From: Diplonema japonicum
Taxonomy: Eukaryota; Protista; Euglenozoa: Diplonemea
Direction: 5' to 3'
Assembly: GCA_964019335.1 (NCBI GenBank)
Contig: OZ025689.1
Span: 1 to 64,000 of the forward strand
DNA length: 64,000 nt
Shown piece after piece: positions 1 through 25,941 of the stretch (position 1 is its first letter; each line of letters begins with the position of its first letter). The position numbers and the translations under genes are program-made. Below the pieces are notes generated by a model that was given only the letters and a program-made list of their open reading frames with translations, did no database searches and was not told the DNA's origin.

Positions 1-1170
1 GGTTGCGGGTTTGCGGGTTTGCGGGTTTGCGGGTTTGCGGGTTTGCGGGTTTGCGGGTTTGCGGGTTTGCGGGTTTGCGGGTTTGCGGGTTTGCGGGTTT
101 GCGGGTTTGCGGGTTTGCGGGTTTGCGGGTTTGCGGGTTTGCGGGTTTGCGGGTTTGCGGGTTTGCGGGTTTGCGGGTTTGCGGGTTTGCGGGTTTGCGG
201 GTTTGCGGGTTTGCGGGTTTGCGGGTTTGCGGGTTGCGGTTTGCGGGTTTGCGGGTTTGCGGGTTTGCGGGTTTTGCGGGTTTGCGGGTTTGCGGGTTTG
301 CGGGTTTGCGGGTTTGCGGGTTTGCGGTTTGCGGGTTTGCGGTTTGCGGGTTTGCGGGTTTGCGGGTTTGCGGGTTTGCGGGTTTGCGGTTTGCGGGTTT
401 GCGGGTTTGCGGGTTTGCGGGTTTGCGGGTTTGCGGTTTGCGGGTTTGCGGGTTTGCGGGTTTGCGGGTTTGCGGGTTTGCGGGTTTGCGGGTTTGCGGG
501 TTTGCGGGTTTGCGGGTTTGCGGGTTTGCGGGTTTGCGGGTTGCGGTTTGCGGGTTTGCGGGTTTGCGGGTTTGCGGGTTTGCGGTTTGCGGGTTTGCGG
601 GTTTGCGGGTTTGCGGGTTTGCGGGTTTGCGGGTTTGCGGGTTTGCGGGTTTGCGGGTTGCGGGTTTGCGGGTTTGCGGGTTTGCGGGTTTGCGGTTTGC
701 GGGTTTGCGGGTTTGCGGGTTTGCGGTTTGCGGGTTTGCGGGTTTGCGGGTTTGCGGGTTTGCGGGTTTGCGGGTTTGCGGGTTTGCGGGTTTGCGGGTT
801 TGCGGGTTTGCGGGTTTGCGGGTTTGCGGTTTGCGGGTTTGCGGGTTTGCGGGTTTGCGGGTTTGCGGGTTTGCGGGTTTGCGGGTTTGCGGGTTTGCGG
901 GTTTGCGGGTTTGCGGGTTTGCGGGTTTGCGGGTTTGCGGGTTTGCGGGTTTGCGGGTTTGCGGGTTTGCGGGTTTGCGGGTTTGCGGGTTTGCGGGTTT
1001 GCGGGTTTGCGGGTTTGCGGGTTTGCGGGTTTGCGGGTTTGCGGGTTTGCGGGTTTGCGGGTTTGCGGGTTTGCGGGTTTGCGGGTTTGCGGGTTTGCGG
1101 GTTTGCGGGTTTGCGGGTTTGCGGGTTTGCGGGTTTGCGGGTTTGCGGGTTTGCGGGTTTGCGGGTTTGC
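1..1170 (+). repeat. Tandem array of the octamer GGGTTTGC (telomere-like, G-quadruplex-prone); runs off the window edge
   Basis: Directly visible. Near-perfect 8-nt period, with occasional 7- and 9-nt variants mostly at ~230-830 and an abrupt end at 1170. The three 'RVCGFAGL' ORFs are artefacts of this repeat. Confidence 0.97.
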
Positions 1171-1782
1171 CCGGTCGTGCCTCGCAATCCTGGCGTTGCC
1201 GCATCCCTGGGCATGGTCACCCCATACGTCCATCCCCTCAGTCTTGCACCTCGGGTCGTGGCAGCTCTCACCCTGCTTGTAGACCGGAGCCCCCAACCAC
1301 CACTTGATCAGAGCCCCAAACTCGTTGTCCGACAGCTGGTTGTAGAAGTCAGGCGTCGCCGTCAACCACGCCCCCGCATAGTGCATTGACTCCGACATCA
1401 ACCTCGCTCTCGAGCGTGCATCTGCTTTCGCCAAGAGGTCCTCCAGCGCCTTCTCATCAAGCACCCTAGAGAGCCACCTCTGGCTGCAGATGTGGGGGGC
1501 CTTGGCCACCATGTCGGGTGTAATCTGCATGCCGCCCTTCGTCCTGTTGAACCACTCGAGCCAGCTCCCCCATACACCCCCTTCCAGCCCATGTTCGTAT
1601 TTGGGATCCAGCTCCTTGCACAGCTTCATCGTCGACGCCCTCGAAGCCATGTTGGCCGCGCGCAGGTGCTCCTGGCAGCTCCTCATCCCAAGCCCACCGA
1701 CTTTTACGGACAGTTTCGCCTGCTGCCATTCTTTCGACCCGTTCTCGAACTGCATGCCGCACACCTTCGACATCGTCTTCCG
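1171..1782 (-). pseudogene. C-terminal part of retrotransposon ORF2 (thumb, CCHC zinc knuckle, start of RLE endonuclease); not in the ORF track
   Basis: My translation, open throughout: KTMSKVCG...QAKLSVKVGGLGMR...AGAWLTATP...EFGALIKWWLG...CHDPRC...DVWGDHAQGC..RIARHDR. It then runs straight into (CAAACCCG)n, and the PD-(D/E)xK core is absent. Confidence 0.88.
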
Positions 1783-2580
1783 TCTTCAGCCACTAGGTGA
1801 GGTCCCATCATCAGTGAGAATGTCCCCTTGGGCACTCCCAAACTCATCTGAATCAGTACTGCTCATCTGAGCTTTCATGCCACCAAAAACTGGTTTCTGT
1901 TTTTGGAGGTTAATCTAGGGGCCATAAGTGATTTTCAATGGAAAAGAAATTGAAGAACTAGGTCATTCTGTGCAAGGGTAAGGGTCTATGGTACTTAAAA
2001 TGCCTATACAAAAATTTTAATTTTTTGATTGCTAGATATCTAGCACTTCATCCTTTAATGGTTAATGAGATTTTTGGAGTTGAAGTGAAAAAATGTACCC
2101 AACCCCTTCAATTTTTTTTTAGAGATGGGGTATTTTGACTGTTTTTAGCCATCTGAGGCCATTCCAGCCCTTAAAAGTGGGAATAAGTGATTTACTTCCC
2201 CTTAAAATGCCACACTGAAATAGCTATCCCATATTACCTTGGGGAAATCCCCAACAAAGCTGGCACACCACATGCATTAAGGACACAATGCAAAATGCAG
2301 AAGAAGAAGACAATAACACCACACAACAACTCAGCCAAGGCACCCCCTGTAATCAGGTGGGCAGTCTGGTCTGAGGGGTCTGGCTGGTCCACCCCACAAA
2401 CCACCCCAACACTGTGAATTTTCGAGGTGGTGTGTTGTGACTTATTTTACACCATGTATGGCATACCTGACATTGCACACAATGTATGCAACACAGGGTG
2501 CACAACACAGTGCACAACATGGCATGTGTTTTATAACATGTACCACTATACTGCACAGGGAAAAGCAGGTGGTGTTGAGA
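1783..2580. mobile_element. ~0.8-kb composite insertion of repeat fragments interrupting ORF2
   Basis: AT-rich block between ...HRFDEM (~2582) and KTMSKVCG (~1779). It contains pieces homologous to 12433-12706 and 17811-17870. Boundaries are uncertain by a few nt. Confidence 0.8.
1843..2065. mobile_element. Partial copy of the TTAA-flanked (piggyBac-like) non-autonomous element
   Basis: Ends in TCCTTTAATGG-TTAA (2051-2065), carries the palindrome GCTAGATATCTAGC, and aligns with 12433-12632. Confidence 0.75.
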
Positions 2581-4661
2581 TCCATCTCGTCGAACCTGTG
2601 CATGACCCCTCCCACATGCGAGTCTGGGACCACTCTCATGTAAAACACCAGTTTGCTGTATGAGCTGCAATACCGGAGAAGTGTGTACCCTGTCTGCCTC
2701 CCCACCTTGGTCAGCATGTCGAAGTTCTCTTCCAGCGCGTCCAAGCGTTTGTTCAGAAAGGCTTGCGTGTACTCCGGCGATCCTATCGGCGCCCCCAGGA
2801 GCATGAAGTTCCTCTCTTTGTGGAAATTCTCTTCTGTCAGGCCATCGAAGCCTGTGTCCTCCACTGTCTGGGGGAGGTCGCCACTAACCCATATGAGCTC
2901 GCACTTCTGGGGTTTCACTTTCAGCCCTATCATCCCGCTCAGCTCACACAAGGTGTTGTACGCCTTTCTCACTTCATCCACATTCCCCACAAGGACGCCA
3001 TCGTCCAGGTAGAACTGGAGGATGTCCAGGTTGCAGTCTTCACTTATCTTGTTCACCAGGGGTTGGATGGCCAGAGAGAACAGCAGCGGTCCCATCGGGT
3101 CCCCCTGTTGCACCCCTTCCTGGGACTTAATCACCTTTCCGTTGTAGTATAATTGGGAGGGCACCCTGTAGCACCAATCGGCCCACGCATACAGCCCCGA
3201 CGCTTGCTCATAGGCCTGTGAGCACAGCTGCCTCCGACAAACACTGTTGAAGGCGTTGGCGTAGTCGATCTTGAGGATCACCTTGTTTTCCTGCTTGTTG
3301 CCCCGTTCCCTGTCCACATACTGCCTGATGGTGTGTATAGCCGCCTCCATTCCAGCAGGGACCGATACCCCCACCTGGCCGCCTTTCTTCAGGTACGAAG
3401 AGGCCACTTCCGGAGCGATCTTCTTCACAAGGGATTTCCCCACCAGCCGACGCAGCACATCCCCAACGGCTATGGGCCGCACGTCCCTGTCGTTCTTCTT
3501 GAGGGCCACAAGGTTCGCCCCTGCCATCAGCGGAGCCACCTCCCTAGGGGCCGTGCCTCTAGCTAATGCGTTGACTGCCCTCGTCACCGACATCAAACAG
3601 CCTTGAGACTCAAAAGCTCCGTCCACCGCGTCCTTGATGTGCTGGGCTCTCAGACCAGTCGGTCCCGCAGCAGTCCCCCTCGGGAAGTCCCTGATTGCGT
3701 CCAGCACTTCTTCCGGCAAGACTTCTACCGCTTCCTTCGTCTTCGCCGGGTTGTCCCATTGGGGGTGTAGTGGCTCTGGATGTTTGCTCTGCAGCGCTCT
3801 CCAGCAATCCTCATTGTCTTCCGCCAGCCCCTGGGCTACAAGCGCCGCGTTTCCTGCCGAGAACCTCCCTTTGCTGCACAGTTCCGTGGCCCTGGCGACC
3901 TTAGAGACCTCGTCGTTCTTAGGTTCCCCCTTCTCACCTGATTCCAGCTTATTCCAGAGGGCCATGTAATTTCCCTTCTCCCACTCCTCCAATCTGGCCT
4001 GGACACTCAGCTCCGTCTCCTTGTCCCGCTTCTTCCCTCCCCTCTTCTTCCACAGGCAGGCTTTGGGGAGCATCGCCACCAGCAGCCAAGCCTCCTCTGT
4101 GTTGTCCTTCACCGCCCGGCCCAGAGTGTGCTTAAGGGTAAGCCCCCACAGTCTTTGAAGGCTCGTCGGGATCGACCCCATGGTCGTGACGTTCATGGCG
4201 GCTATGGCTTCCAGGCTGGGTAACTCGGTCCTCGTCGGGGCCGGCGGGGGGGTCGTGTATTCCCCTTCCCTTCGCACCGCCTTTTTGCACTCGTCGTGGC
4301 ACCCCTGACCCTTCCACACACAGCCCCTGCACACCAGGCACCTCTCGAGGTCCAGTCTCCTCAGAACGCTCTCCGGGATCTCATCACTCTCCAGGTGCCC
4401 ATCCAGGTGACACTTCCATACCCTTGTCGAGTTGAACGGGGTCGTGCTTTTGCACTTCGACCTAGCGCAGTTCGCCACCGGACAGTACAGGAATTGTTGG
4501 TTCCTTGCCCCCATCTGGTCCAACACCCCTGCCTTCCCGTACCCAGGGATCGCACGGTCTATTATGTCCCACTCCCCGATGTCCTCACCCGGGGCCTCGG
4601 AGGGTTGCTTACCTGCCTTTTGTAGAGCAACCGATTGGGACTCATCAAGGAGCATCATCAT
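2581..4661 (-). CDS. Retrotransposon ORF2, N-terminal and RT part: Cys/His zinc fingers plus reverse transcriptase
   Basis: Part of track ORF 2442..5162. Likely start at MMM (4661). CPVANC...HLDGH and CLVC..CHDEC motifs; YLDD at ~3000-3011; QGDP at ~3098-3110. Confidence 0.9.
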
Positions 4662-7600
4662 CGACTCCTCCTCTCGACTGCATACTCGTAGTGGTTGCCG
4701 TTGTACGCCAGCACCACCACCTTCTCGTGGTCGGAGTTGTACTCCCCTATCATCAGGACTGGGTTGTTCCCCCCAGCAACCACGAGTATCGTGCGGCCAA
4801 ACGCTTGTGCTGCGGCTGCCAGGCACAAGTGGTCTCCCCACGTCGCCGCTGTGCCCATCCCTTCCAAGTACCGGTCCCAACCCTCGCTGCAAAACGGGGC
4901 ATAGTGCTCCTCCCGGTGTTTCATCCATTCTACAACCTCGCTCCTGATGTGGGTGTGGTCCCCGTAGGCTTCCCCGAGCGAACCGGCCAGGGCGTGGAAC
5001 ATGCAGTTCCCGTCCTTCTCCGTCGATCTCCTCGTCAGCTTGAAGCTCTTCATGATCTCGTCCACTGACTTGCCGGCCCTGGGTTGTTTGTCGGGGTTCC
5101 ACAGATTCCGCTGCCTGTGTAGTGCACAGTGCGTCTGGTTCGACGAGCACGCCGCAGCACACGTTCCACAGAGGTTCACCTTCATGTTCCTCGCCTGCTC
5201 TTGTTTCACAAAATGATGGTGGACCGCATTGAGGTGTTTAACTAGACAGCTTGCCACACTGGTGCGGAAAGAGCAGCCTTCCATCCGGCATTGATGTTTG
5301 TCTGTTCCTTCTTTTTCCCCCTCCTTCTGCGCCTCCGTGTGCTCATCATCCAAATCCATGGGGGGAGGGTCACCACCTCCTTGCAACGCGTCCCCTGCCA
5401 GCGTCAAGTCCGCAAAGGGGTCCAGGTGTTCGGCCTGAAAGAGCTTATCCTCCGTCTCGGCTCGTTCCTTCGCCGCTTGCTTGGCGTCCTCCTTCTTTTT
5501 TCTGCGTCTTGAGCTTCTAGGCGGGCCCAAGTACACCGGCAGGTAGTGACCTCTCGATCCGCGTCTTGTCTTCCTCAGCTTTACCGGTCCGAATCTCTGG
5601 GTCGGGTCAGCACCAGCTTTCCCCACCATCACTTCCGACATGGCCCAGAGCGACATCAGCCCCCCTATCCAAACTGAAGTGCTTCCCACCAGAGTGCCCC
5701 CTACTGCTAGCCAAGCGAGCTCCCCGGCGGACCATTCATCCCCTCGGGGCCCCACCTGTACCCTTGACCTGCGGGTGGTCCTCCTGTCGCTCCCCGGCCT
5801 CTTCCACAACACTGCCGCATGCAGGAAGGAGGGGGCCATCCCGATGCCCGCCCCCAGCACCTGCCTCACCCCTGGGATCAGCAAGAGGGAGACCAGGGCG
5901 ACCCAGGCCCACGCCCCCAGGTGCTCCCATCTCACCCCTTCCTTGCTGTGTCCCGTCCGTCTGCGGTGCCTCCTTGTGCCGGTTGCAGCCCCAGGTGCCG
6001 GGATTCTGGGTGCCAGGGGTTGGGCCCCAGGCGTTCCCACCTCGGTCCGCTTCAGCCCCATTGCAGGGTCATCTGGCTTCTGTTCCAGGGCGGTCTCGTG
6101 TTCCTCTCTGCGGGCCCTCCTCCTCCCTTCTTTCCTCGCACGACGGTGCCTTTTCTTCTCCTGTCTGGCAGCCTCCCTCGCCCCCTCCCTCGCCTTGGTC
6201 CTCTTCTCCCGACGCCTCTGAAGGGCCGTTTCGCTCCTGTGCCTCCTCCTGTTCTTCTTCCTCTTGGGCGCTGGCTTAGGTTCCCTGCCACCCATGGCAA
6301 TCCAGGGGGCTCTTTTCTGTCTTCTCACAAGGGTGTGCAGTGGTGCTCTCACGTCGCTCGCAGCCTCCGCTCCAACCACACCTTGGCAGGCGGTGGGGGT
6401 GGGTGCTGGGTCCCCCTGGTTGTTTGAAAAGAAAAAAGGTTCCTCCTTGTTTGTTTTTTTTTTTTCTTTCCCTTCCACCCTCAAAAAAAGCCCCCGGCCC
6501 TTGGGGACCAGGGTGTACACCTCCGTAGAGGGTCCAGAAAAAATGGGGGGCAGAGAGGGAGGGGCACTACCTTCTCTTGGGCGTGCTGTCTCTCCCTCTG
6601 CCTTTTTTTCCTCCAAAGAGGGTCTGTTTTTCACCTCCGTGGAGGGTCCCTCTGGAGAGGGCTCTATAAAAGAAAAAGGGGGGGACGAATGGGGGGGAGG
6701 AACACTACCCTCTCTCGGGAGTGCCACCTCTTCCCCTCTCTCTCTGTTTTCCTCCGAAGAGGGTCTGTTTTTTACCTCCGTGGAGGGTTCCTCTGGAGAG
6801 GGCTCTAAAAATGAAAAAGGGGGGGACAAATGGGGGGGAGGAGCACCACCCTCTCTCGGGAGTGCCACCTCTTCCCCTTTCTCTCTATTTTCCTCCGAAG
6901 AGGGTCTGTTTTCCTCCGAAGAGGGTTCTAAAAAAAAAAGGGGGGCGGGTGGGGCACTATCCTCTCTTGGGAGTGCCACCCCCCCTTGCCCACAAAAAAG
7001 GGGATCTAAAAAAGGGGGTTCGTCTGTTAACCCAGGGGATGGGTCTTCCTGGGGTGTGCGGGTGAGCTTGGGGCCTACCGCACGCAGGGTGATCGACACC
7101 CTGACACCAGTGGACATCCCGGACGGGATGTGGTGCGTCCACTGGTGTCTCGCTTCACCTTCCAACAATGCCCATGAGAAGGGGGGCACCAGGTATTTCG
7201 CCACCCTGTCCCCCCTCCTCATGACCATTGTGGTCTCGGCTCCGTACGAGAGGACTAGGACAATCGGTCCCAGCCTCGCGTCGTCCTTGTGGGCGGCAAT
7301 CCCACAACCAGACTTGTACTTGTTGACAAGTACCTGGTTGGGGACCACCTCGAGCCGCGGCGGCCACCTCCCTCACCCACCCCTCCACCCCCCCTGGGAT
7401 CCCCGTGGTGGGGCGCACCTTGGCGTTCGTCCCCTCCCACCGGTACCCGTATTGGAGGGTCTCCCTCCCTGAGTTCCCAGACAGGGCCTCCCACTTTCCT
7501 GAAAGCAGGGCTTTCGGGAAGGCAGGGGCCGGGCCCGTCCTCAACCCGGGAGGGTGTTCACCATACACCAGTACCCACCCCTTTTTTTCTCCCTCTTTTC

Positions 7601-7973
7601 TTCCCTCTTCAACAATAGCAGGGTCGGCTGCAGGGGTCGTGGTCGCGGCGGTCGTGGCTGCAGCAGGGGCGGCTGCGGCGGTCTCAGTTGCGGCGATCAG
7701 GGCGGCAGGGTCGGCTGCGGCGTTCAGGGCGGCTGGGGCGGCCGTGGCTGTAGCAGCGGCGGTCAAAACCGCGGTCTCTGCTAGTGATTTTTTTATTTTA
7801 TTATTTTTTTTTTCTAAAGGGGGGTGGGGGGATCTAGGGGGTGGGGATTCATACTGCCCAACCAGATTGCCTGGTTGGGTGGGTCTCGGCGCGTGCTGCG
7901 GGCTGCGGGCTTGCTCCTGCGGGCTGCGGCTGCGGCTGCGGTCACCTCCTCCTGCGAGTCGTCTTGGATCCAT
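4658..7973 (-). CDS. Retrotransposon ORF1: low-complexity N-terminus, AlkB-like 2OG-Fe(II) dioxygenase, Pro/Glu repeats, basic region, hydrophobic segments, C2H2 finger, OTU-like cysteine protease; one frameshift at ~7350-7372
   Basis: ATG at 7973 (MDPRR, after an A-run). AlkB motifs RETLQYGYRW / NQVLVNKY..G.GIAAHKD / WTHHIP / RVSITLR. Finger CRMEGC..KHLNAVH. OTU motifs DGNCMFHAL..WGDH..NHY. Joins track ORFs 7155..8135 and 4658..7348. Confidence 0.82.
6510..6990 (-). repeat. In-frame tandem repeat, ~3.5-4 copies of 111-141 bp, inside ORF1
   Basis: Recurring EEVALPREG.APPP..PPFSF.EPS.E.PSTEVKNRPS units; GTGCCACC anchors at 6721, 6862 and 6973. Confidence 0.9.
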
Positions 7974-8142
7974 TTTTTTTTTTTTTTGTTTTATAGTGTG
8001 TGTTGGGGGGGAGGGGATCCTTTCGTTGAGCGGCGGGCAGGCCGACGGGCAAAACAACCCCCCCGGACGACGGCGACGACGGACGACGGACGCAGCGGCA
8101 AACCCAGGCAGAGGCGGCAGGCACCAGCAGAACACGAACGAC

Positions 8143-8180
8143 CAATAAAGTACAGAAACTGTAGCTTTAGAATCGTTGGT
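8143..8180 (-). other. Spliced-leader (mini-exon) sequence, diplonemid type, 38 of 39 nt
   Basis: Minus strand reads ACCAACGATTCTAAAGCTACAGTTTCTGTACTTTATTG. This is near-identical to the diplonemid SL as I recall it (AACCAACGATTTAAAAGCTACAGTTTCTGTACTTTATTG) and contains the euglenozoan core CAGTTTCTGTACT. It is followed by GTCGTT, not by a recognisable SL RNA intron. Confidence 0.92.
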
Positions 8181-8699
8181 GAAGAGGTCGACCTGCAGTC
8201 AGCGTCTTCTCCTCCCGGCGAGGCTGCTTCGAGTCCTGCTCCCGCTTTCCCTTGTGTTCCACCCTCCGCCGCTGCTGCTGCATTCGGGCGTCCACTGCTC
8301 CAGAAGGGCATCCAGCTGGTGGGCCACCGTGATTGGGGGTCCGCCTCCCTGTCCCTTCACTTCCCTCTCGGATGACTCCTCAGCTTCGGTGGTTTTTTCA
8401 TTGCCGAAGGAGTCCTCTGTGAGGTCAGTGTTGGATTCAGTGTTGGGTTTTCCTCTTCGCCGTCCGGTACCGGGGGCCCGGGATCCAACTGTACAGGCCC
8501 TTTGACTAACAGCGCCCCTGCTATCGATCTCATCATGGCCGTTGACACCTCTTGGACACCTTCGACGCAGCCCTCTAAGAAGTAGCCTTGGTTACCCGGG
8601 CTGTCTTTTTTTTTTCCTTTCAAGCTGCCTATTGTTAAGGACATGCATGCGCAACCTTGTTGAGCATTAATGAAACATAGGGGACCCAATCGGGTTATT

Positions 8700-8965
8700 C
8701 ATGAAACTAAGGGGGGGTTTTTTGAGCATTTTGAAAACTAAGGGGTTGACTTTGAGCGGTTTCCCACCGTAGGGGCCTAGTTAGGGCATTTGAAAACCTG
8801 AGGGGGCGGACTTTGAACACTTTGGAAACTTAGGGGGCGGGATTTGAGCGTTTTGAAGACTTAGGGGCTTTGAGCATTTCGGAAACCTAGGGGGTGGACT
8901 TTGAGCATTTTGGAAATCTAGGGGGCGGAATTTGAGCGTTTCAGAAACTTAGGGGTCGAGTTAGG
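8700..8965 (+). repeat. Degenerate ~30-bp minisatellite, ~8-9 units, with TAGGGG core
   Basis: Units resemble ACTTTGAGCATTTTGGAAACTTAGGGGGCGG. Confidence 0.85.
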
Positions 8966-22329: not shown

Positions 22330-25300
22330 CTATTCTTCGAGAACCTGAAGGTGCTGCGGAAGGAACCGTCGCACGCCCTTGTGCGGCTGTACGTCCACCA
22401 TGACGCCTGTCACGTAATGAGACTTTGCGGTGTCGTACTGCACCACCTTGCCAGTGCAGTTGATTACCTTCTCATGTCTGATGCCGGCTGAAGGCAAGAT
22501 GAGGACTGAAGCACCGATCTCAGGCAAGTCCACCTCTTCTTGCAGGCCGTTCGTGTCGATGTAGACCACCTTACTGAAATCTTCTTGTCTCCTCAGGCGC
22601 TGTGCTGCCATCGCCTCCTCAGCTTCTTGCTTCTCTAAATCGCACACGGTTGTGTTCGGGTGCAGTGTCGTCATGCATTTCATATTGTTGTCCACAGCAG
22701 AGTATATCACGCGTTGGTTCTTGCGCTTCTGCACGTCATCCAACATGAGAAGCGGATTCACCGGCACTAATTCAGGCGGTGGCTTTGGCTTCGGTAATGC
22801 TTCAGAAGCAACAGACTCGTCAACCTCACCGGCCTTTTTGATGCCGTTGAACTCGTCGTAGGCCTTTGCGTCCTTGAGGGAACTTGCGTGGTACAACCTG
22901 CACAGCAACCAGACAGCGCCGCCAAGGAACGATATCAGCAGCATAATGCTTAGGCTCGCTACTGCTGTGTACTGCACAGCGTCGCTGAGTGTTGATTTGG
23001 TGTTGAAGTCGACAAGAACGACGGCACCAAGCATGAGGCAGAGGAGGAGGTTCAGGGCAACAGGGGGACACTCAAAATATAACAAGAGCTTGTCACACCA
23101 CGGGCTCTTCACCAGCGTTATAATGAGGAATACAAGATGCACTGCTGCAGCGATGATGAAAGGTATGGCACAGGAATTCCCCTTTAGTTTTATCCCTAGC
23201 ACAGCACTCACACTGATGGCTCTGAACATCAAGTACGGTAAGAAGGTTGTCTGAGTGTCCTTCAGAGAAGTAAACATGGGGCTCCATCTCCTCTTGAAAG
23301 TGGGGTCGCTCGTGTTTGCACTGCTCCAAAATCTTGATGGGACAACATGAAGTGCTCTGCTCCCATCTGCTGACATGTTGCTGTATACCACTTCACTGTA
23401 GAAACCATCCAAGTGGCACTCTTCCTGTGTGTATCTAGCGTTGATGCTTTTCCCCCTTAACTTGAAGAGGTTCGCGAAGACCACCGTGCAGGCAATACAT
23501 CCCGCGAGGAGGATGGATAGGACAAATACCCCAAAAACTATGTCTCCGATGTCACCGTCGTCTGAAATAAGCTTTGTAGCATTGAAAGACAAAGGGCAGA
23601 TAAACCAGCTCACGATTACTATGGGGATGCAGGGAAACATCAATCTTGCCAAAGGGGGGCCGAGCTCTTTAGATCCAAAAAGGTTTAGCATTAGAACCAT
23701 AAAGCAGTGCAAGAGTACGGGAACACAAACCAGAATCACTACCCACGTCAGGTCGCCAATCGAAAACGAACTCGGTCTGGGGAACAAAATTACCCAGGTC
23801 ATGTATTCTGCCGCTTTTGTAATGTCAATTGGGTTGCAAGGTGACCTCATGAAGGCTGTAAGGATCTGGGCCTCGATCAAAGCAAGGGTGGCAGTCATGG
23901 GCTGCTTGCTGAGTATGGAATGCAGCAGGGCAACACAGATAACCACGATCAACAAGTTGCCTAATAGCTCCGCACGCCAGCCATTCTCAAGAATGTCACA
24001 TTCCGCACCGGTCAGGCCGCTCCTGCAGTCACACATTCCTAGAGAATTACACCTCCCAGCCTCATTACATTGGGTATCGTTACTTTCAGAGTTACACAAA
24101 CATGAGTGAAAGTTACAAGCCTCGACTTCCGACAAAGGAGGACACCCAATGTCACTGGGGTTGAGCCACGGAGGCAGCTTTGCATCGAGCACTGTCCTAT
24201 TTCTGTAGAGGCTCCCGGTATTGCAGGGCTTAGAGCACTCAGACCAAGCGGACCATTCACTTACGCTGCACGTAGCAGGGATCACCCAGTCTCCCTCGGA
24301 AGGCTTTGTGACAGGGACCGATGTGCTGTTTGCATCGGCTGTTATGTTGTAGTAAGCAACAGCCACATCAGACGCTGGAGCATTGGCGTAATACAGCTGC
24401 ACAGCCACAGCACCGTAGGACAATGTTACGCCCTGCAAAGAAGCTAATAATGCCTGCTCTGTTATGTAGAAAGAGCTGGAGTATTCGTCACGTCCCACAG
24501 CCTTGATCTGAAATGGGGCGTCATGTATCCTCGAAAGCAGCAGACATCTATACCCTTGCGGCAGCTGGTAGTTGTGTGAAATGCTCACCATTACTGCAGT
24601 GCTCCACTCCTTCCCGTCTTCAGGTGGTGGTGCAAATAAGAAGTATCCTTGCTGCGAGAGGACACCTCCTCTGCCTCGGAGGAAATACTTCCACTGTTCC
24701 GACTGCGTACCCTGCATAACACTGATTCCATACGTGCCGTCACCCTGAGGAAGGACCAACCTGCACTGCACGTGTGTGCTGTTTTGAATGAGTATGTCGC
24801 ATGTAGGCGTGCTTTGTGTCGACGACGTAAACACCACAGATGTCACAAGCTTGGCATTAGCGAGGGCAAGGACAAGTGTGCCGTCTGTACAAAATTGCAG
24901 AACATCTGGATGCATGCAGGTGTCTAGGTAAACGTTGGTGATCACACCAACGGGGATGGGCGAAGAAACGATACTCATAAACCTTACATTTGAGTCAATT
25001 GCATTCTTGTCTAGCAGATCAGTCAGTGGTGATCCTGCTGGCAGCACCAAGGGACGGATGCTAATTCCCCAAATGCCTTTCGTGGTACTAGGAATGGTCA
25101 GATTGCAGGTAAGGCGGCTGCTGAAACCTGAAACAGCTGATAGTACTGTGCAAGAAGGTGTACTGCCAGAGCTGGGCTGCCACGAACCAGAGAGTAGAGT
25201 ACTTGTCTGGCTTTCCAATGTCACCTGATTAAACGGTACCTCAAGGACTGGTGCTGCTGTAATCAGTGTGAAAACTACCTCGGCATTCACAGGGAAGTCA

Positions 25301-25941
25301 TAGCCACCAAATTCAAGTACACCGCCGTGGCCGCAGGTCAGAACTGCAGTAGCTGCATTAGCACACCCAGTAATAGACAACACTACAGGTCGGGGTATAA
25401 CGCGCACTTCTTCTTTGAGGAATGATGGCTGATACTTGTTTGACCATGACATCGCAGTAACCTTTCGCGTGGCTGTTGTGAAGTCACCATTTGTCGACAG
25501 AAGTACTGTAGTCCCTGAAGGGCTGAAATCTCCCGTTGCTGCGCAGCCTCTATAAACACCATTGGAGCAAGCAATGCTGTACTTGAGGTTTATACATGGG
25601 TGTGATGCAACACGGATCACCTCCACTGCAGCATCAACTGCAGAGACCGCGACATTTGCAGCACCTACGATGACAGTGTTTGCATCCAACGAAGGAGGTG
25701 GCATGTTGAAGCATTTGGTGCTGTCGCTCTTGCAGCTACAAAACGGAGCACCGAAGGTACCGGGTTGACACTGCACGTCTGCGCTGGGGCACCCTGCGCA
25801 CACTTCACTGCAGTCAAACGACGCACACGTACAACTGCCACCATCCCACCGCCCTAACACACAGGTGTCGCTGCTGCACAACGTACTCGGCACCGCAGGG
25901 TCTAAGACAAGACCCACAACAATCATGCATATCAATAGCAT
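22330..25941 (-). CDS. Large surface/membrane protein: signal peptide, Cys-rich and Ig-like ectodomain, TSP1 repeat, EGF-like domain, multi-pass TM region
   Basis: 1203-aa ORF; CSVSEWSAWSECSKPCNTG (TSP1); CNEAGRCNSLGMCDCRSGLTGAEC (EGF); about 8-9 hydrophobic helices. Confidence 0.8.
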   Translation of the reverse strand: MLLICMIVVGLVLDPAVPSTLCSSDTCVLGRWDGGSCTCASFDCSEVCAGCPSADVQCQPGTFGAPFCSCKSDSTKCFNMPPPSLDANTVIVGAANVAVSAVDAAVEVIRVASHPCINLKYSIACSNGVYRGCAATGDFSPSGTTVLLSTNGDFTTATRKVTAMSWSNKYQPSFLKEEVRVIPRPVVLSITGCANAATAVLTCGHGGVLEFGGYDFPVNAEVVFTLITAAPVLEVPFNQVTLESQTSTLLSGSWQPSSGSTPSCTVLSAVSGFSSRLTCNLTIPSTTKGIWGISIRPLVLPAGSPLTDLLDKNAIDSNVRFMSIVSSPIPVGVITNVYLDTCMHPDVLQFCTDGTLVLALANAKLVTSVVFTSSTQSTPTCDILIQNSTHVQCRLVLPQGDGTYGISVMQGTQSEQWKYFLRGRGGVLSQQGYFLFAPPPEDGKEWSTAVMVSISHNYQLPQGYRCLLLSRIHDAPFQIKAVGRDEYSSSFYITEQALLASLQGVTLSYGAVAVQLYYANAPASDVAVAYYNITADANSTSVPVTKPSEGDWVIPATCSVSEWSAWSECSKPCNTGSLYRNRTVLDAKLPPWLNPSDIGCPPLSEVEACNFHSCLCNSESNDTQCNEAGRCNSLGMCDCRSGLTGAECDILENGWRAELLGNLLIVVICVALLHSILSKQPMTATLALIEAQILTAFMRSPCNPIDITKAAEYMTWVILFPRPSSFSIGDLTWVVILVCVPVLLHCFMVLMLNLFGSKELGPPLARLMFPCIPIVIVSWFICPLSFNATKLISDDGDIGDIVFGVFVLSILLAGCIACTVVFANLFKLRGKSINARYTQEECHLDGFYSEVVYSNMSADGSRALHVVPSRFWSSANTSDPTFKRRWSPMFTSLKDTQTTFLPYLMFRAISVSAVLGIKLKGNSCAIPFIIAAAVHLVFLIITLVKSPWCDKLLLYFECPPVALNLLLCLMLGAVVLVDFNTKSTLSDAVQYTAVASLSIMLLISFLGGAVWLLCRLYHASSLKDAKAYDEFNGIKKAGEVDESVASEALPKPKPPPELVPVNPLLMLDDVQKRKNQRVIYSAVDNNMKCMTTLHPNTTVCDLEKQEAEEAMAAQRLRRQEDFSKVVYIDTNGLQEEVDLPEIGASVLILPSAGIRHEKVINCTGKVVQYDTAKSHYVTGVMVDVQPHKGVRRFLPQHLQVLEE

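What the first reader, a model, noticed from the sequence alone, without database searches (positions are those of the whole stretch)
1171..8180. SL-capped CRE/SLACS-like retrotransposon with an AlkB dioxygenase plus OTU protease cassette (best candidate for an undescribed system)
Seen: a single element runs SL - ORF1 [AlkB with intact HxD...H and RxSxTxR; repeats; hydrophobic helices; C2H2; OTU with intact DGNC...H] - ORF2 [ZnF, RT, CCHC, RHD]. Known: AlkB enzymes oxidatively remove base methylations, OTUs deubiquitinate or process polyproteins, and the AlkB plus OTU pair occurs in Betaflexiviridae replicases. Classical CRE/SLACS/CZAR elements are not described with AlkB, as far as I know. 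Inference: the element carries a virus-like kit to repair or demethylate its own RNA and to counter ubiquitin-based host control.
Basis: partly seen in the sequence, partly recalled or inferred. Interest (0 to 1): 0.92.

Follow-up and report, generated by a model that had tools for sequence, protein, structure and literature searches.

The report
Chromosome-end retrotransposon carrying AlkB and OTU
This is a broken copy of a young jumping-gene family in a diplonemid protist that lives at chromosome ends and, unusually, encodes its own AlkB-type demethylase and OTU-type deubiquitinase/protease alongside its reverse transcriptase, a combination kept across several lineages and two species but apparently never described.

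Summary
All the named parts are present: spliced leader (SL), AlkB, repeats, hydrophobic helices, C2H2, OTU, zinc finger, RT and CCHC-RHD.

The window copy is dead. It has a 5-bp and a 1-bp deletion and a 799-bp nested insertion. The terminal (GGGTTTGC)n array cuts it off right after RHD. Intact copies, such as G000:C9, encode one 2,804-aa polyprotein, so ORF1/ORF2 is a frameshift artefact.

AlkB-OTU-RT linkage is real:
- about 90 copies in this genome;
- at least four RT lineages with AlkB, OTU and RT in one open frame;
- a collinear Diplonema papillatum gene model, KAJ9442719.1.

Catalytic residues are intact. Omega is about 0.30 for AlkB and 0.17 for OTU, against 0.83 for the linker.

It is not a SLACS-type insertion into SL genes. 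Copies are retro-copied trans-spliced mRNAs inserted in one orientation into the terminal 8-bp arrays, then eroded and re-capped. Enzyme functions are inferred only.

I found no paper describing AlkB in a retrotransposon. OTU and other deubiquitinase fusions are known.

The scan had already noted this architecture in 31 notes on other DNA of this genome. The terminal array has unexplained "wrong" strand polarity.

The parts
3..1170 (.). Terminal tandem array (GGGTTTGC)n at the contig start, 147.5 units. On the element's sense strand it reads (GCAAACCC)n downstream of the element.
   Evidence: The same array, in the same polarity, lies at 9 other contig ends.
1171..8180 (-). The whole element copy: SL-headed, 3'-truncated, frameshifted, with a nested insertion.
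1171..1782 (-). Distal retained piece: RT thumb to the start of the restriction-like endonuclease. CCHC is at 1263-1201 and RHD at 1182-1174. The terminal array cuts it off at 1171.
1783..2581 (-). 799-bp nested insertion made of two dispersed short repeats: a ~275-bp unit with hundreds of candidate copies and a ~520-bp unit. It is not an intron.
   Evidence: Contigs from 4 public runs carry the uninterrupted form.
2889..3500 (-). Reverse transcriptase core (Pfam RVT_1), with FYLDDG at 3014-2997.
   Evidence: Only R2 proteins match in the PDB.
4395..4469 (-). Zinc-finger motif upstream of the RT (CX4CX14CHX3H).
4676..4676 (-). Site of a 1-bp deletion relative to intact copies. It creates the false ORF1/ORF2 boundary.
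   Evidence: All four laid runs have the extra base.
4697..5017 (-). OTU cysteine protease/deubiquitinase domain. The catalytic DGNC is at 5014-4994 and the His (NGNHYEY) at 4702-4682.
5216..5290 (-). C2H2 zinc finger.
5639..5914 (-). Two hydrophobic helix-like segments.
6557..6912 (-). 141-bp (47-aa) coding tandem repeats, 2.5 units. The number varies between copies.
7082..7560 (-). AlkB (2OG-Fe(II) dioxygenase) domain, split by a 5-bp deletion near 7357. RETLQYGY is at 7466-7443, HxD at 7297-7280, His at 7141-7130 and RxSxTxR at 7102-7082.
7960..8142 (-). 5'UTR (8142-7974) and start codon (7973).
8143..8180 (-). Complete spliced-leader sequence at the exact 5' boundary of the copy.
8204..8557 (-). 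Fragment of an older, 3'-truncated copy of the same family (post-endonuclease region). It lies immediately upstream in the same orientation.

Best explanation
SHOWN
- Window 1171-8180 (minus strand) is a dead, terminally eroded copy of a young multi-copy family of non-LTR retrotransposons with a restriction-like endonuclease (RLE). The host is a diplonemid-type euglenozoan.
- Intact copies encode one ~2,800-aa polyprotein: AlkB dioxygenase, repeats and basic tract, two hydrophobic helices, C2H2, OTU, zinc finger, RT, CCHC/RHD endonuclease, then an ~800-aa tail of unknown function.
- Copies begin exactly at the first bases of the spliced leader, and at least one ends in an A-run. They are therefore DNA copies of mature trans-spliced mRNAs.
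- They lie almost only at contig ends. The sense strand is continuous with the C-rich strand of the terminal 8-bp array and the 3' end points to the terminus.
- At each end the array joins the element at a different internal point. Short relic arrays sit between an older truncated copy and the SL of the next copy.

INFERRED LIFE CYCLE
- The last gene cluster is transcribed towards the chromosome end, so read-through transcription would cover the element. Trans-splicing and polyadenylation would then define the RNA.
- The endonuclease nicks the G-rich strand of the terminal array. Its TTT may pair with the poly(A) tail, and reverse transcription proceeds from there.
- Chromosome ends then erode into the element and are re-capped with new array, probably by telomerase. 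New copies insert into that array.

INFERRED ACCESSORY FUNCTIONS
- AlkB most likely removes base methylations from the element's own long RNA template that would stall reverse transcription. Candidates are m1A/m3C-type lesions, m6A, or the methylated cap-proximal bases of the SL.
- OTU most likely acts as a deubiquitinase that protects the polyprotein or RNP, and possibly also as the protease that cuts the polyprotein.
For: Architecture: Pfam hits on the intact copy are AlkB 166-299, OTU 942-1047 and RVT_1 1447-1650. The RLE motif is at residues 1927-2006.

AlkB:
- HxD...H and RxSxTxR are invariant in a 54-sequence alignment.
- The structure model has pLDDT 90.5.
- It matches ALKBH8, ALKBH6, ALKBH2, ALKBH3, ALKBH5 and AlkB at probability 1.0.
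- By sequence the best solved match is ALKBH8, an RNA-acting enzyme, at E 2.9e-9.

OTU: the catalytic Cys and His are conserved in this genome, D. papillatum and D. ambulator.

Linkage:
- About 90 element-borne AlkB hits.
- Four RT lineages with AlkB, OTU and RT in single open frames of 1,930-3,005 aa.
- D. papillatum KAJ9442719.1 has the same order and is collinear at 34-38% identity.

Selection: omega is 0.30 for AlkB (p 2e-8), 0.17 for OTU and 0.83 for the linker. AlkB+OTU differ from linker+tail at p 2e-5.

Not a recent host capture: the best host AlkB paralogue is only 26-27% identical.

SL origin:
- 19 independent 5' junctions have different flanks.
- The SL joins the 5'UTR at 35 to 222 nt from the ATG.
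- One copy carries an SL plus partial-SL duplicate that fits re-splicing at the SL's internal ACAG.

Chromosome-end niche:
- 39 of 40 AlkB hits within 20 kb of a contig start are on the minus strand (p 7e-11).
- 3' junction points vary between ends.
- Relic arrays and a 5'-truncated copy lie behind an array.
- An A-run meets the array on C9.
- All large ORFs from 10 to 64 kb share the element's strand.
- A TERT candidate exists.

A second deubiquitinase fold (UCH) occurs in related elements. This argues that deubiquitination itself is what is selected.

AlkB domains recur in RNA-virus polyproteins.
Against: - No biochemical or RNA evidence was available. The public runs were served only as contigs of unknown library type.
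- The AlkB substrate cannot be read from sequence. Structural neighbours include DNA repair enzymes (ALKBH2/3) and ALKBH4-type and Ofd2-type enzymes as well as RNA enzymes.
- The omega estimates come from about 20 young copies, use simple site counting, and a few loci hold two copies.
- The three other lineages could not be fetched. Their linkage rests on coordinates and shared open-frame lengths.
- A retro-copied SL lacks its upstream splice acceptor. How the common 170-nt 5'UTR form is regenerated is not explained.
- The terminal array has its G-rich strand at the 5' end. This is opposite to canonical telomeres, so the re-capping step is not understood.
Confidence: 0.6

Rival explanations
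1. Same element and life cycle, but AlkB acts on DNA or protein rather than on the element's RNA. It might demethylate the target or new cDNA to escape silencing, or hydroxylate or demethylate a chromatin or RNP protein as ALKBH4/NMAD-1-like and Ofd2-like enzymes do.
For: Fold neighbours include ALKBH2/3 (DNA), NMAD-1 and Ofd2 at scores similar to ALKBH8. The D. papillatum genome paper reports DNA methyltransferase homologues and links DNA methylation to transposon repression. The polyprotein has a strongly basic tract and zinc fingers that could bind DNA.
Against: The best sequence match is ALKBH8, which acts on RNA. AlkB domains fused to polymerases elsewhere are in RNA-virus polyproteins. 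Nothing here discriminates between substrates.
Confidence: 0.2
2. The family is a co-opted or mutualistic chromosome-end buffer, comparable in role to Drosophila HeT-A/TART. AlkB and OTU would then serve end protection or array maintenance rather than purely selfish replication.
For: Copies of four related lineages occupy a large share of contig ends in one orientation. Ends erode into elements and are re-capped. The terminal array is non-canonical in sequence and polarity, and no TTAGGG arrays exist.
Against: A TERT candidate is present. Arrays are added at variable registers to eroded ends, as telomerase healing would give, so elements are not needed to explain end maintenance. Terminal arrays are also a classic safe haven for selfish site-specific elements such as MoTeR and FoTeR. 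Many copies are dead.
Confidence: 0.15
3. OTU is only a polyprotein-processing protease, as in some RNA viruses, with no role against ubiquitin.
For: A single 2,800-aa polyprotein with membrane-like helices and several enzymatic modules plausibly needs cleavage. No other protease domain was detected. An OTU sits next to a peptidase in Betaflexiviridae replicases.
Against: The nearest solved relatives are cellular deubiquitinases OTUD5, OTUD3 and OTUD1. Related elements in D. papillatum and in metagenomes carry an unrelated deubiquitinase fold, UCH. Other non-LTR ORF2 proteins carry Josephin or OTU deubiquitinase domains.
Confidence: 0.25
4. Chance chimera: host AlkB and OTU gene fragments happen to lie next to an RT in this copy.
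For: None beyond the frameshifts that make the window copy look like separate ORFs.
Against: Single uninterrupted ORFs span all domains in many copies. The same order holds in four lineages and in another species. Host AlkB paralogues are only 26-27% identical.
Confidence: 0.01

Closest known systems
CRE-group site-specific non-LTR retrotransposons of trypanosomatids (SLACS, CRE1/2, CZAR)
   Same: RT followed by CCHC-RHD...E...R(P)xD...D restriction-like endonuclease (motif as quoted in PMC12857005). Zinc fingers lie upstream of the RT. The host is a euglenozoan. The nearest named relatives are D. papillatum models auto-labelled 'SLACS 132 kDa protein' at 43% identity.
   Different: Those elements insert inside SL RNA genes (established knowledge). 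Here the whole SL heads each copy, flanks differ, and the target is the terminal 8-bp array. This family has one ~2,800-aa ORF with AlkB, OTU and a long C-terminal tail. Motif spacings differ (CX4C, X10H, X6-RHD, RPAD). RT phylogeny against reference CRE sequences could not be run.
Telomere-targeted RLE retrotransposons of fungi (MoTeR1, FoTeR, Cnl1)
   Same: RT plus REL-endonuclease elements found at telomeric repeat tracts in a fixed orientation, grouped with SLACS/CRE by their authors (PMC12857005). If fungal telomeres are canonical, the sense strand is continuous with the C-rich repeat strand, as it is here.
   Different: In the fungal elements the 5' end faces the chromosome terminus. Here the 3' end does, because the array itself has the opposite polarity. 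Fungal proteins are ~1,150-1,184 aa with no AlkB or OTU and no SL.
Betaflexiviridae and other RNA-virus replicase polyproteins with AlkB followed by OTU
   Same: The same order of an AlkB domain and an OTU protease inside a polymerase polyprotein (PMC544882). The AlkB model matches many RNA-virus polyprotein AlkB domains.
   Different: No methyltransferase, helicase or RdRp. The polymerase here is an RT with an endonuclease and the replicon is chromosomal. There is no special sequence closeness: the best viral fold hits are giant-virus AlkBs, and by sequence the nearest relatives are small metagenomic AlkBs. The likeness is therefore most likely convergent.
Diplonema papillatum gene models KAJ9442719.1, KAJ9446222.1 and relatives
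   Same: AlkB, OTU, RT and RLE in the same order and with similar spacing, collinear at 34-38% identity. They are probably members of the same element group.
   Different: They are annotated only as 'SLACS 132 kDa protein' or 'tRNA (carboxymethyluridine(34)-5-O)-methyltransferase'. The genome paper counts 'a dozen AlkB-type genes' as host regulators and defers transposable-element analysis (PMC10161547). Some relatives add a UCH domain in the tail.
RLE or other non-LTR elements with accessory proteases or deubiquitinases (NeSL and Utopia with Ulp1; Dualen/RandI and a Symbiodinium ORF2p with Josephin or OTU)
   Same: Precedent for cysteine protease or deubiquitinase domains fused N-terminal to a non-LTR RT (PMC4640811; preprint PMC13405545).
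   Different: None of these is reported with an AlkB dioxygenase, with an SL-headed structure, or with terminal-array targeting.

Membership tests
Non-LTR retrotransposon with restriction-like endonuclease (R2/CRE/NeSL/R4/Hero grade) | RT domain of the non-LTR type | tested here: met
   RVT_1 at E 7e-17 and 2.8e-16. The only PDB hits are R2 proteins. There are 387 RT homologues.
Non-LTR retrotransposon with restriction-like endonuclease (R2/CRE/NeSL/R4/Hero grade) | CCHC motif plus PD-(D/E)XK-type RHD...E...RPD...D/E endonuclease C-terminal to the RT | tested here: met
   Residues 1927-2006 of the intact copy match the motif. Spacings differ somewhat from the pattern quoted. The window copy keeps only CCHC-RHD.
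Non-LTR retrotransposon with restriction-like endonuclease (R2/CRE/NeSL/R4/Hero grade) | No LTRs; 5'-truncated copies; 3' A-rich end, as expected from target-primed reverse transcription | tested here: met
   A 5'-truncated copy lies behind a relic array on C107. An A-run joins the array on C9. Arrangements are head-to-tail, not LTR-flanked.
CRE clade in the strict sense (SLACS/CRE/CZAR) | Site-specific insertion within the SL RNA gene exon | tested here: not met
   19 junctions show the complete SL at the element's 5' end with unrelated flanks or relic terminal repeats. Rfam finds no SL RNA gene in the window.
CRE clade in the strict sense (SLACS/CRE/CZAR) | RT groups with CRE references in a phylogeny | not testable with these tools
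   No reference CRE, NeSL, R4 or Hero sequences were obtainable. The only indirect evidence is the 'SLACS' auto-label on the closest D. papillatum models.
AlkB family of Fe(II)/2-oxoglutarate dioxygenases | HxD...H iron triad and RxxxxxR 2OG-binding motif | tested here: met
   H230, D232, H282, R293 and R299 (polyprotein numbering) are invariant or nearly so among 54 AlkB sequences. The alignment with D. papillatum copies agrees.
AlkB family of Fe(II)/2-oxoglutarate dioxygenases | AlkB-type jelly-roll fold | tested here: met
   Model pLDDT 90.5. Foldseek probability is 1.0 to ALKBH8, ALKBH6, ALKBH2, ALKBH3, ALKBH5 and AlkB.
AlkB family of Fe(II)/2-oxoglutarate dioxygenases | Oxidative demethylase or hydroxylase activity | not testable with these tools
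   Needs an enzyme assay.
OTU cysteine proteases/deubiquitinases | Pfam OTU above threshold with the catalytic Cys (DGNC) and His | tested here: met
   48.2 and 46.7 bits against a cut-off of 23.3. Cys and His are conserved in three diplonemid species. OTUD5 and OTUD3 match at E 4e-6.
Telomere-targeted RLE elements (MoTeR/FoTeR type) | Insertion into terminal repeat tracts in a fixed orientation | tested here: met
Telomere-targeted RLE elements (MoTeR/FoTeR type) | 5' end towards the chromosome terminus | tested here: not met
   Here the 3' end faces the terminus at all ends examined. FoTeR and MoTeR have the 5' end distal.
Alphaflexi/Betaflexiviridae-type replicase | Methyltransferase-helicase-RdRp backbone | tested here: not met
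   Pfam finds only AlkB, OTU and RVT_1 in the 2,804-aa polyprotein.

The most novel reading that the evidence does not exclude
AlkB is a dedicated eraser for the trans-spliced leader. It would strip the base methylations of the hypermethylated SL cap region (m6,6A and m3U in kinetoplastid cap 4, from my own knowledge; the diplonemid cap is uncharacterised), and perhaps other marks. That would let the RT copy the 8.7-kb mRNA to its very first nucleotides.

Together with the OTU and UCH deubiquitinases, this would make a retroelement kit tailored to euglenozoan mRNA biology. The kit would operate at chromosome ends whose terminal repeat has its C-rich strand at the 3' end, forming a retroelement-plus-telomerase end system of a kind not described.

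A sequence hint: all 19 junctions retain the SL down to position 3, 15 of 19 retain position 2, and position 1 is A in only 7.
Probability: 0.15. Interest if true: 0.9.

Novelty: new variant of a known kind. Interest (0 to 1): 0.78.

Why it matters
- Retrotransposons are thought to rely on host enzymes for RNA modification. An element that keeps its own AlkB dioxygenase under selection, across lineages and species, implies that RNA (or DNA) base methylation limits retrotransposition in these protists. It would be the first retroelement counterpart of the AlkB domains of RNA viruses.
- Two unrelated deubiquitinase folds recruited by the same element group point to ubiquitin-based control of retroelements.
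- The family shows how trans-splicing can replace an internal promoter in defining a LINE-like RNA.
- It gives a dated, readable record of erosion, re-capping and re-insertion at chromosome ends.
- It exposes an unusual terminal repeat polarity that deserves direct testing.
- It corrects an existing reading. Some of the "dozen AlkB genes" in D. papillatum, interpreted as host regulators, are gene models of transposable elements.

Tried and rejected
Hypotheses rejected
- Intron hypothesis for 1783-2581. It is a nested insertion of dispersed repeats, absent from other copies.
- Insertion into an SL RNA gene.
- Chance chimera or recent host capture.
- An apparent interior copy on C20. It sits at an N gap next to an array, so it is probably a scaffolded contig end.

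Searches that led nowhere
- The word-indexed protein search with the AlkB domain alone found nothing, probably because of its length and word limits.
- The Atlas was blank for the C-terminal tail. For the RT it returned only generic RVT_1/LINE-1-type clusters, which do not place the clade.
- Literature searches for the 8-mer repeat returned only chance hits. The search for the exact SL string found no paper that holds it.
- A GGGTTTGC word in the 5'UTR was considered as a template for the array. It is absent from the C9 subfamily, so I dropped it.

Analyses that failed or were limited
- Pairwise dN/dS between whole copies was misleading. The low-identity stretches were frameshifts in dead copies. 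I replaced it with per-site counts per domain.
I did not try to read them by other means.
- The public runs are served only as contigs. They give no evidence on expression, molecule ends or strand.

Full report
**What is in the window.** The window is the first 64 kb of contig C42 of a 62.5-Mb, 132-contig assembly. Bases 3-1170 are 147.5 units of an 8-bp repeat that reads GGGTTTGC on the plus strand. The long reading frames between 1171 and 8180 are on the minus strand.

Read on that strand, the element runs as follows.
- It starts with an exact 35-nt kinetoplastid/diplonemid-type spliced leader at 8177-8143. None is expected by chance.
- A 169-nt 5'UTR and an ATG at 7973 follow.
- Coding sequence then carries Pfam 2OG-FeII_Oxy_2 (AlkB), OTU and RVT_1.
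- It ends with CCHC...RHD at 1263-1174.

**State of this copy.** I aligned the window copy to a 99.1%-identical intact copy on C97. This showed four defects.
- A 5-bp deletion near 7357, inside AlkB.
- A 1-bp deletion near 4676. This alone creates the apparent ORF1/ORF2 boundary.
- A 799-bp insertion at 1783-2581.
- Truncation one codon after RHD, where the terminal array begins.

The insertion is made of two dispersed short repeats. One is a ~275-bp unit with hundreds of candidate copies genome-wide. It is a nested insertion, not an intron. Contigs from four public runs in four studies carry the uninterrupted form and the missing base.

**The intact element.** C9 holds a complete copy (L022:1359-9770, minus strand). 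It has an SL, a 143-nt 5'UTR, a single 2,804-aa ORF and a ~735-nt T-rich 3'UTR that ends in an A-run against the array.

Domain layout of the polyprotein:

| Residues | Feature |
|---|---|
| 166-299 | AlkB |
| (between AlkB and the basic tract) | 47-aa repeats |
| 511-600 | strongly basic tract |
| around 639-666 and 700-730 | two hydrophobic segments |
| 850-874 | C2H2 |
| 942-1047 | OTU |
| 1124-1148 | zinc finger |
| 1447-1650 | RT (FYLDD at 1610) |
| 1927-2006 | endonuclease motif CX4CX10HX3CX6-RHD-X19-E-X10-RPAD-X15-D |
| about 2007-2804 | ~800-aa tail with no detectable family |

The tail gave no hit in Pfam or the Atlas.

**Are AlkB and OTU real and functional-looking?**
- AlkB. In an alignment with 53 AlkB proteins from an exhaustive 1.84-billion-protein search, the iron triad (H, D, H) and the R..S.T.R motif are invariant or nearly so. 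The AlphaFold model is confident (pLDDT 90.5). It matches ALKBH8, ALKBH6, NMAD-1, Ofd2, ALKBH2, ALKBH3, ALKBH5 and E. coli AlkB at probability 1.0. By sequence the best solved relative is ALKBH8 (E 2.9e-9).
- OTU. It matches OTUD5 and OTUD3 (E 4e-6). The catalytic Cys and His are kept here, in D. papillatum and in a D. ambulator transcript.

**Is the linkage conserved?** Yes, on three levels.
1. *Within the family.* There are at least 66 matches to the AlkB-OTU region, many inside open frames of 2,300-2,970 aa.
2. *Between lineages in this genome.* The Pfam AlkB scan finds 8 host-like genes at interior sites and about 90 element-borne hits. I combined that with the OTU scan and a search with the D. 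papillatum RT. Three further lineages emerge. Examples are C18/C31/C48, C33/C37/C45 and C24/C79/C93/C8.
   - They differ in HMM scores, in identity to the D. papillatum RT (36-38% against 41% for this family), and in AlkB-to-OTU spacing (about 1.4-1.8 kb against 2.3 kb).
   - In each, AlkB, OTU and RT lie in that order in one open frame (1,951, 2,889/1,930 and 3,005/2,383/2,163 aa).
This rests on coordinates.
3. *Between species.* D. papillatum KAJ9442719.1 (2,635 aa) has AlkB at 290-380, OTU at 1047-1128 and RVT_1 at 1510-1736. It aligns collinearly with this polyprotein: AlkB at 38.5% identity, and OTU through endonuclease at 34% over 1,353 aa.

The host AlkB paralogues of this genome are at most 26-27% identical to the element's AlkB. 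It is therefore not a recent capture.

**Selection.** I projected about 20 copies onto the natural C9 coding sequence and counted variable sites per domain.

| Region | Approximate omega | Test |
|---|---|---|
| AlkB | 0.30 (43 nonsynonymous, 49 synonymous) | p 2e-8 against neutrality |
| OTU | 0.17 | |
| zinc finger to pre-RT | 0.23 | |
| inter-domain linker | 0.83 | |
| tail | 0.61 | |

AlkB+OTU differ from linker+tail at p 2e-5. The linker serves as an internal control for mutation bias. The method is crude, but the contrast is clear.

**What the SL means.** Across 19 distinct 5' junctions, the sequence upstream of the SL is different every time. It is either an older, 3'-truncated copy of the family, or a few units of the terminal repeat, or unrelated DNA.
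- The SL is retained to position 3 in all 19 junctions and to position 2 in 15. Position 1 is A in only 7.
- The SL is joined to the 5'UTR at many different points, from 35 to 222 nt upstream of the ATG.
- Two short variants remove a GT...AG segment.
- One copy has the SL followed by the part of the SL that lies after its internal ACAG. This fits a transcript of an SL-bearing copy being trans-spliced again.

So the SL is acquired by trans-splicing of element transcripts and is then copied into DNA. The elements are not inserted into SL RNA genes as SLACS, CRE and CZAR are, and Rfam finds no SL RNA gene here. The SL occurs 215 times dispersed in the genome.

**Where the family lives.** Ten contig ends that I read all carry the array with the same polarity: 5'-(GGGTTTGC)n at left ends and (GCAAACCC)n-3' at right ends.
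- Of 40 element-type AlkB hits within 20 kb of a contig start, 39 are on the minus strand (p 7e-11).
- On contigs of known length, plus-strand copies lie 1-10 kb from the right end.
- The elements therefore point their 3' ends at the terminus, and their sense strand is continuous with the C-rich repeat strand.
- One apparently interior copy, on C20, abuts an array followed by Ns. It is probably a scaffolded contig end.

**Record of erosion and re-insertion.**
- The array joins the element at a different internal position at each end: within the endonuclease (window), just after OTU (C75), before the RT (C13, C34), in the tail (C97, C58) or in the 3'UTR (C9, C16).
- The repeat register at the junction varies.
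- Short relic arrays lie between an older truncated copy and the next copy's SL.
- On C107 a copy truncated at residue ~930 is followed by 5.5 repeats and then by a 5'-truncated copy that starts at residue ~2519. This is the classic signature of target-primed reverse transcription from the 3' end.

**Life-cycle model.** The simplest model has four steps.
1. The endonuclease nicks the G-rich strand of the terminal array.
2. The nick primes cDNA synthesis on the polyadenylated mRNA. The TTT of the repeat can pair with the poly(A), which fits the A-run/CCCGCAAA junction on C9.
3. Ends later erode into the element and are re-capped.
4. New copies insert into the new array.

A TERT candidate exists (Telomerase_RBD, 28.4 bits, in a 1,086-aa frame on C41). 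Re-capping by telomerase is therefore plausible.

All 24 ORFs of 250 aa or more that do not overlap a longer opposite-strand ORF between 10 and 64 kb share the element's strand. The four plus-strand ORFs in that range all overlap longer minus-strand ORFs. Read-through transcription from the last gene cluster could therefore feed the terminal elements without a promoter of their own. This is inference.

**Unexplained.**
- The strand that ends 3' at the chromosome terminus is the C-rich one, the opposite of canonical telomeres. No (TTAGGG)4 exists anywhere in the assembly. Other first-stage notes on this genome flagged the same polarity. I could not test end structure because the public runs are available only as contigs.
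- It is unclear how the common 170-nt 5'UTR form is regenerated from copies whose splice acceptor has been replaced by the SL.

**Likely function of the accessory domains (inferred).**
- AlkB enzymes remove N-methyl groups that block base pairing. An 8.7-kb RNA that must be copied end to end, including a cap-proximal SL that is heavily base-methylated in kinetoplastids (my own knowledge), is an obvious client.
- AlkB domains recur in RNA-virus polyproteins. In Betaflexiviridae replicases an OTU follows them, in the same order as here (PMC544882).
- For OTU, the closest relatives are cellular deubiquitinases.
- Related elements in D. papillatum and in metagenomes carry an unrelated deubiquitinase fold, UCH. 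Other non-LTR ORF2 proteins carry Josephin or OTU domains (preprint PMC13405545). This favours deubiquitination as the selected activity, with polyprotein processing as a possible second role.
- A DNA or protein substrate for AlkB remains a live rival.

**Comparison with what is known.**
- *Grade.* The element is an RLE-type non-LTR retrotransposon. Only R2 proteins match in the PDB. Its nearest named relatives are D. papillatum models auto-labelled SLACS.
- *Strict CRE clade.* It fails the defining target-site feature of SLACS/CRE/CZAR. A reference phylogeny could not be run.
- *Fungal telomere-targeted elements.* In habit it resembles MoTeR and FoTeR, but with the opposite orientation to the terminus.
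- *Literature.* I searched 8.1 million PMC papers and bioRxiv and found no description of an AlkB domain in a retrotransposon. The D. papillatum genome paper lists "a dozen AlkB-type genes" as evidence of host methylation dynamics and defers transposable-element analysis (PMC10161547).
- *Protein databases.* In the 1.84-billion-protein search, the only hit in the listed top 150 shown to carry both AlkB and OTU is a D. papillatum model.

**Verdict.** The element is better described as an SL-headed, terminal-array-targeting RLE retrotransposon with a conserved AlkB-OTU module. This is a new variant of a known kind.

The scan had already noted the architecture in 31 first-stage notes on other DNA of the same genome. 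That reflects the family's copy number and is not independent support.

I did not work around it.
Only natural copies were used.

Noticed in passing
window 3-1170, and the contig ends held in L005, L012, L022, L024, L025, L026, L027, L031, L044: The terminal 8-bp array has 'wrong' polarity. The G-rich strand (GGGTTTGC) is at the 5' end of left ends and (GCAAACCC)n runs 3' at right ends. No (TTAGGG)4 occurs anywhere in the 62.5-Mb assembly. A TERT candidate exists at G000:C41:533974-534300.
   Followed up: partly
window 10008-63685: All 24 ORFs of 250 aa or more that do not overlap a longer opposite-strand ORF are on the minus strand. They form one unidirectional gene cluster transcribed towards the chromosome end, the same direction as the terminal element. 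One ORF (22330-25941) has TSP1 and EGF domains. Three others tested have no Pfam family.
   Followed up: partly
window 1793-2065 (also C42:556377-556648 and many other contigs): A ~275-bp dispersed short repeat, about 90-94% identical between copies, with 487 first-look candidates genome-wide. It looks like a SINE or other non-autonomous element. Here it is nested in the RT thumb together with a rarer ~520-bp repeat.
   Followed up: partly
window 8703-8955: A 31-bp tandem repeat (8.4 units, 67% matches) lies just upstream of the older element fragment. Its function is unknown.
   Followed up: no
G000 interior sites, e.g. C4:422493, C13:175954, C16:545600 (frames ~830-860 aa); C6:471316, C103:147581 (807 aa); C11:169186, C24:291742, C44:459161 (1,640 aa): At least three other multi-copy ORF families at interior positions carry OTU domains. 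OTU fusions seem common among repeats in this genome.
   Followed up: no
G000:C24:1961-45980: Four head-to-tail copies of a related lineage lie at a 10,659-bp period near a contig start. Each has AlkB, OTU and RT. Two have 3,005-aa open frames.
   Followed up: no
L045 (G000:C20:398328-401732), positions 2914-3405: An element fragment and a ~300-bp C-strand array are followed directly by a run of Ns inside a contig. Either two contig ends were scaffolded together at their arrays or letters are withheld.
   Followed up: partly
Proteins P0300, P0296 (D. papillatum) and P0008 (metagenome): Related RT polyproteins carry a UCH (USP-type) deubiquitinase domain. It lies C-terminal to the RT in the two D. 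papillatum models and N-terminal to it in P0008. P0300 has it in addition to OTU; Pfam found no OTU in P0296 or P0008.
   Followed up: partly
G000:C4:41710, C53:354548, C38:471583, C27:546329, C81:84091, C5:214988, C62:280681, C22:82756: Eight interior AlkB-family genes score higher on the Pfam model than the element-borne copies. They are presumably the cellular AlkB homologues. The closest is only 26-27% identical to the element's AlkB.
   Followed up: partly
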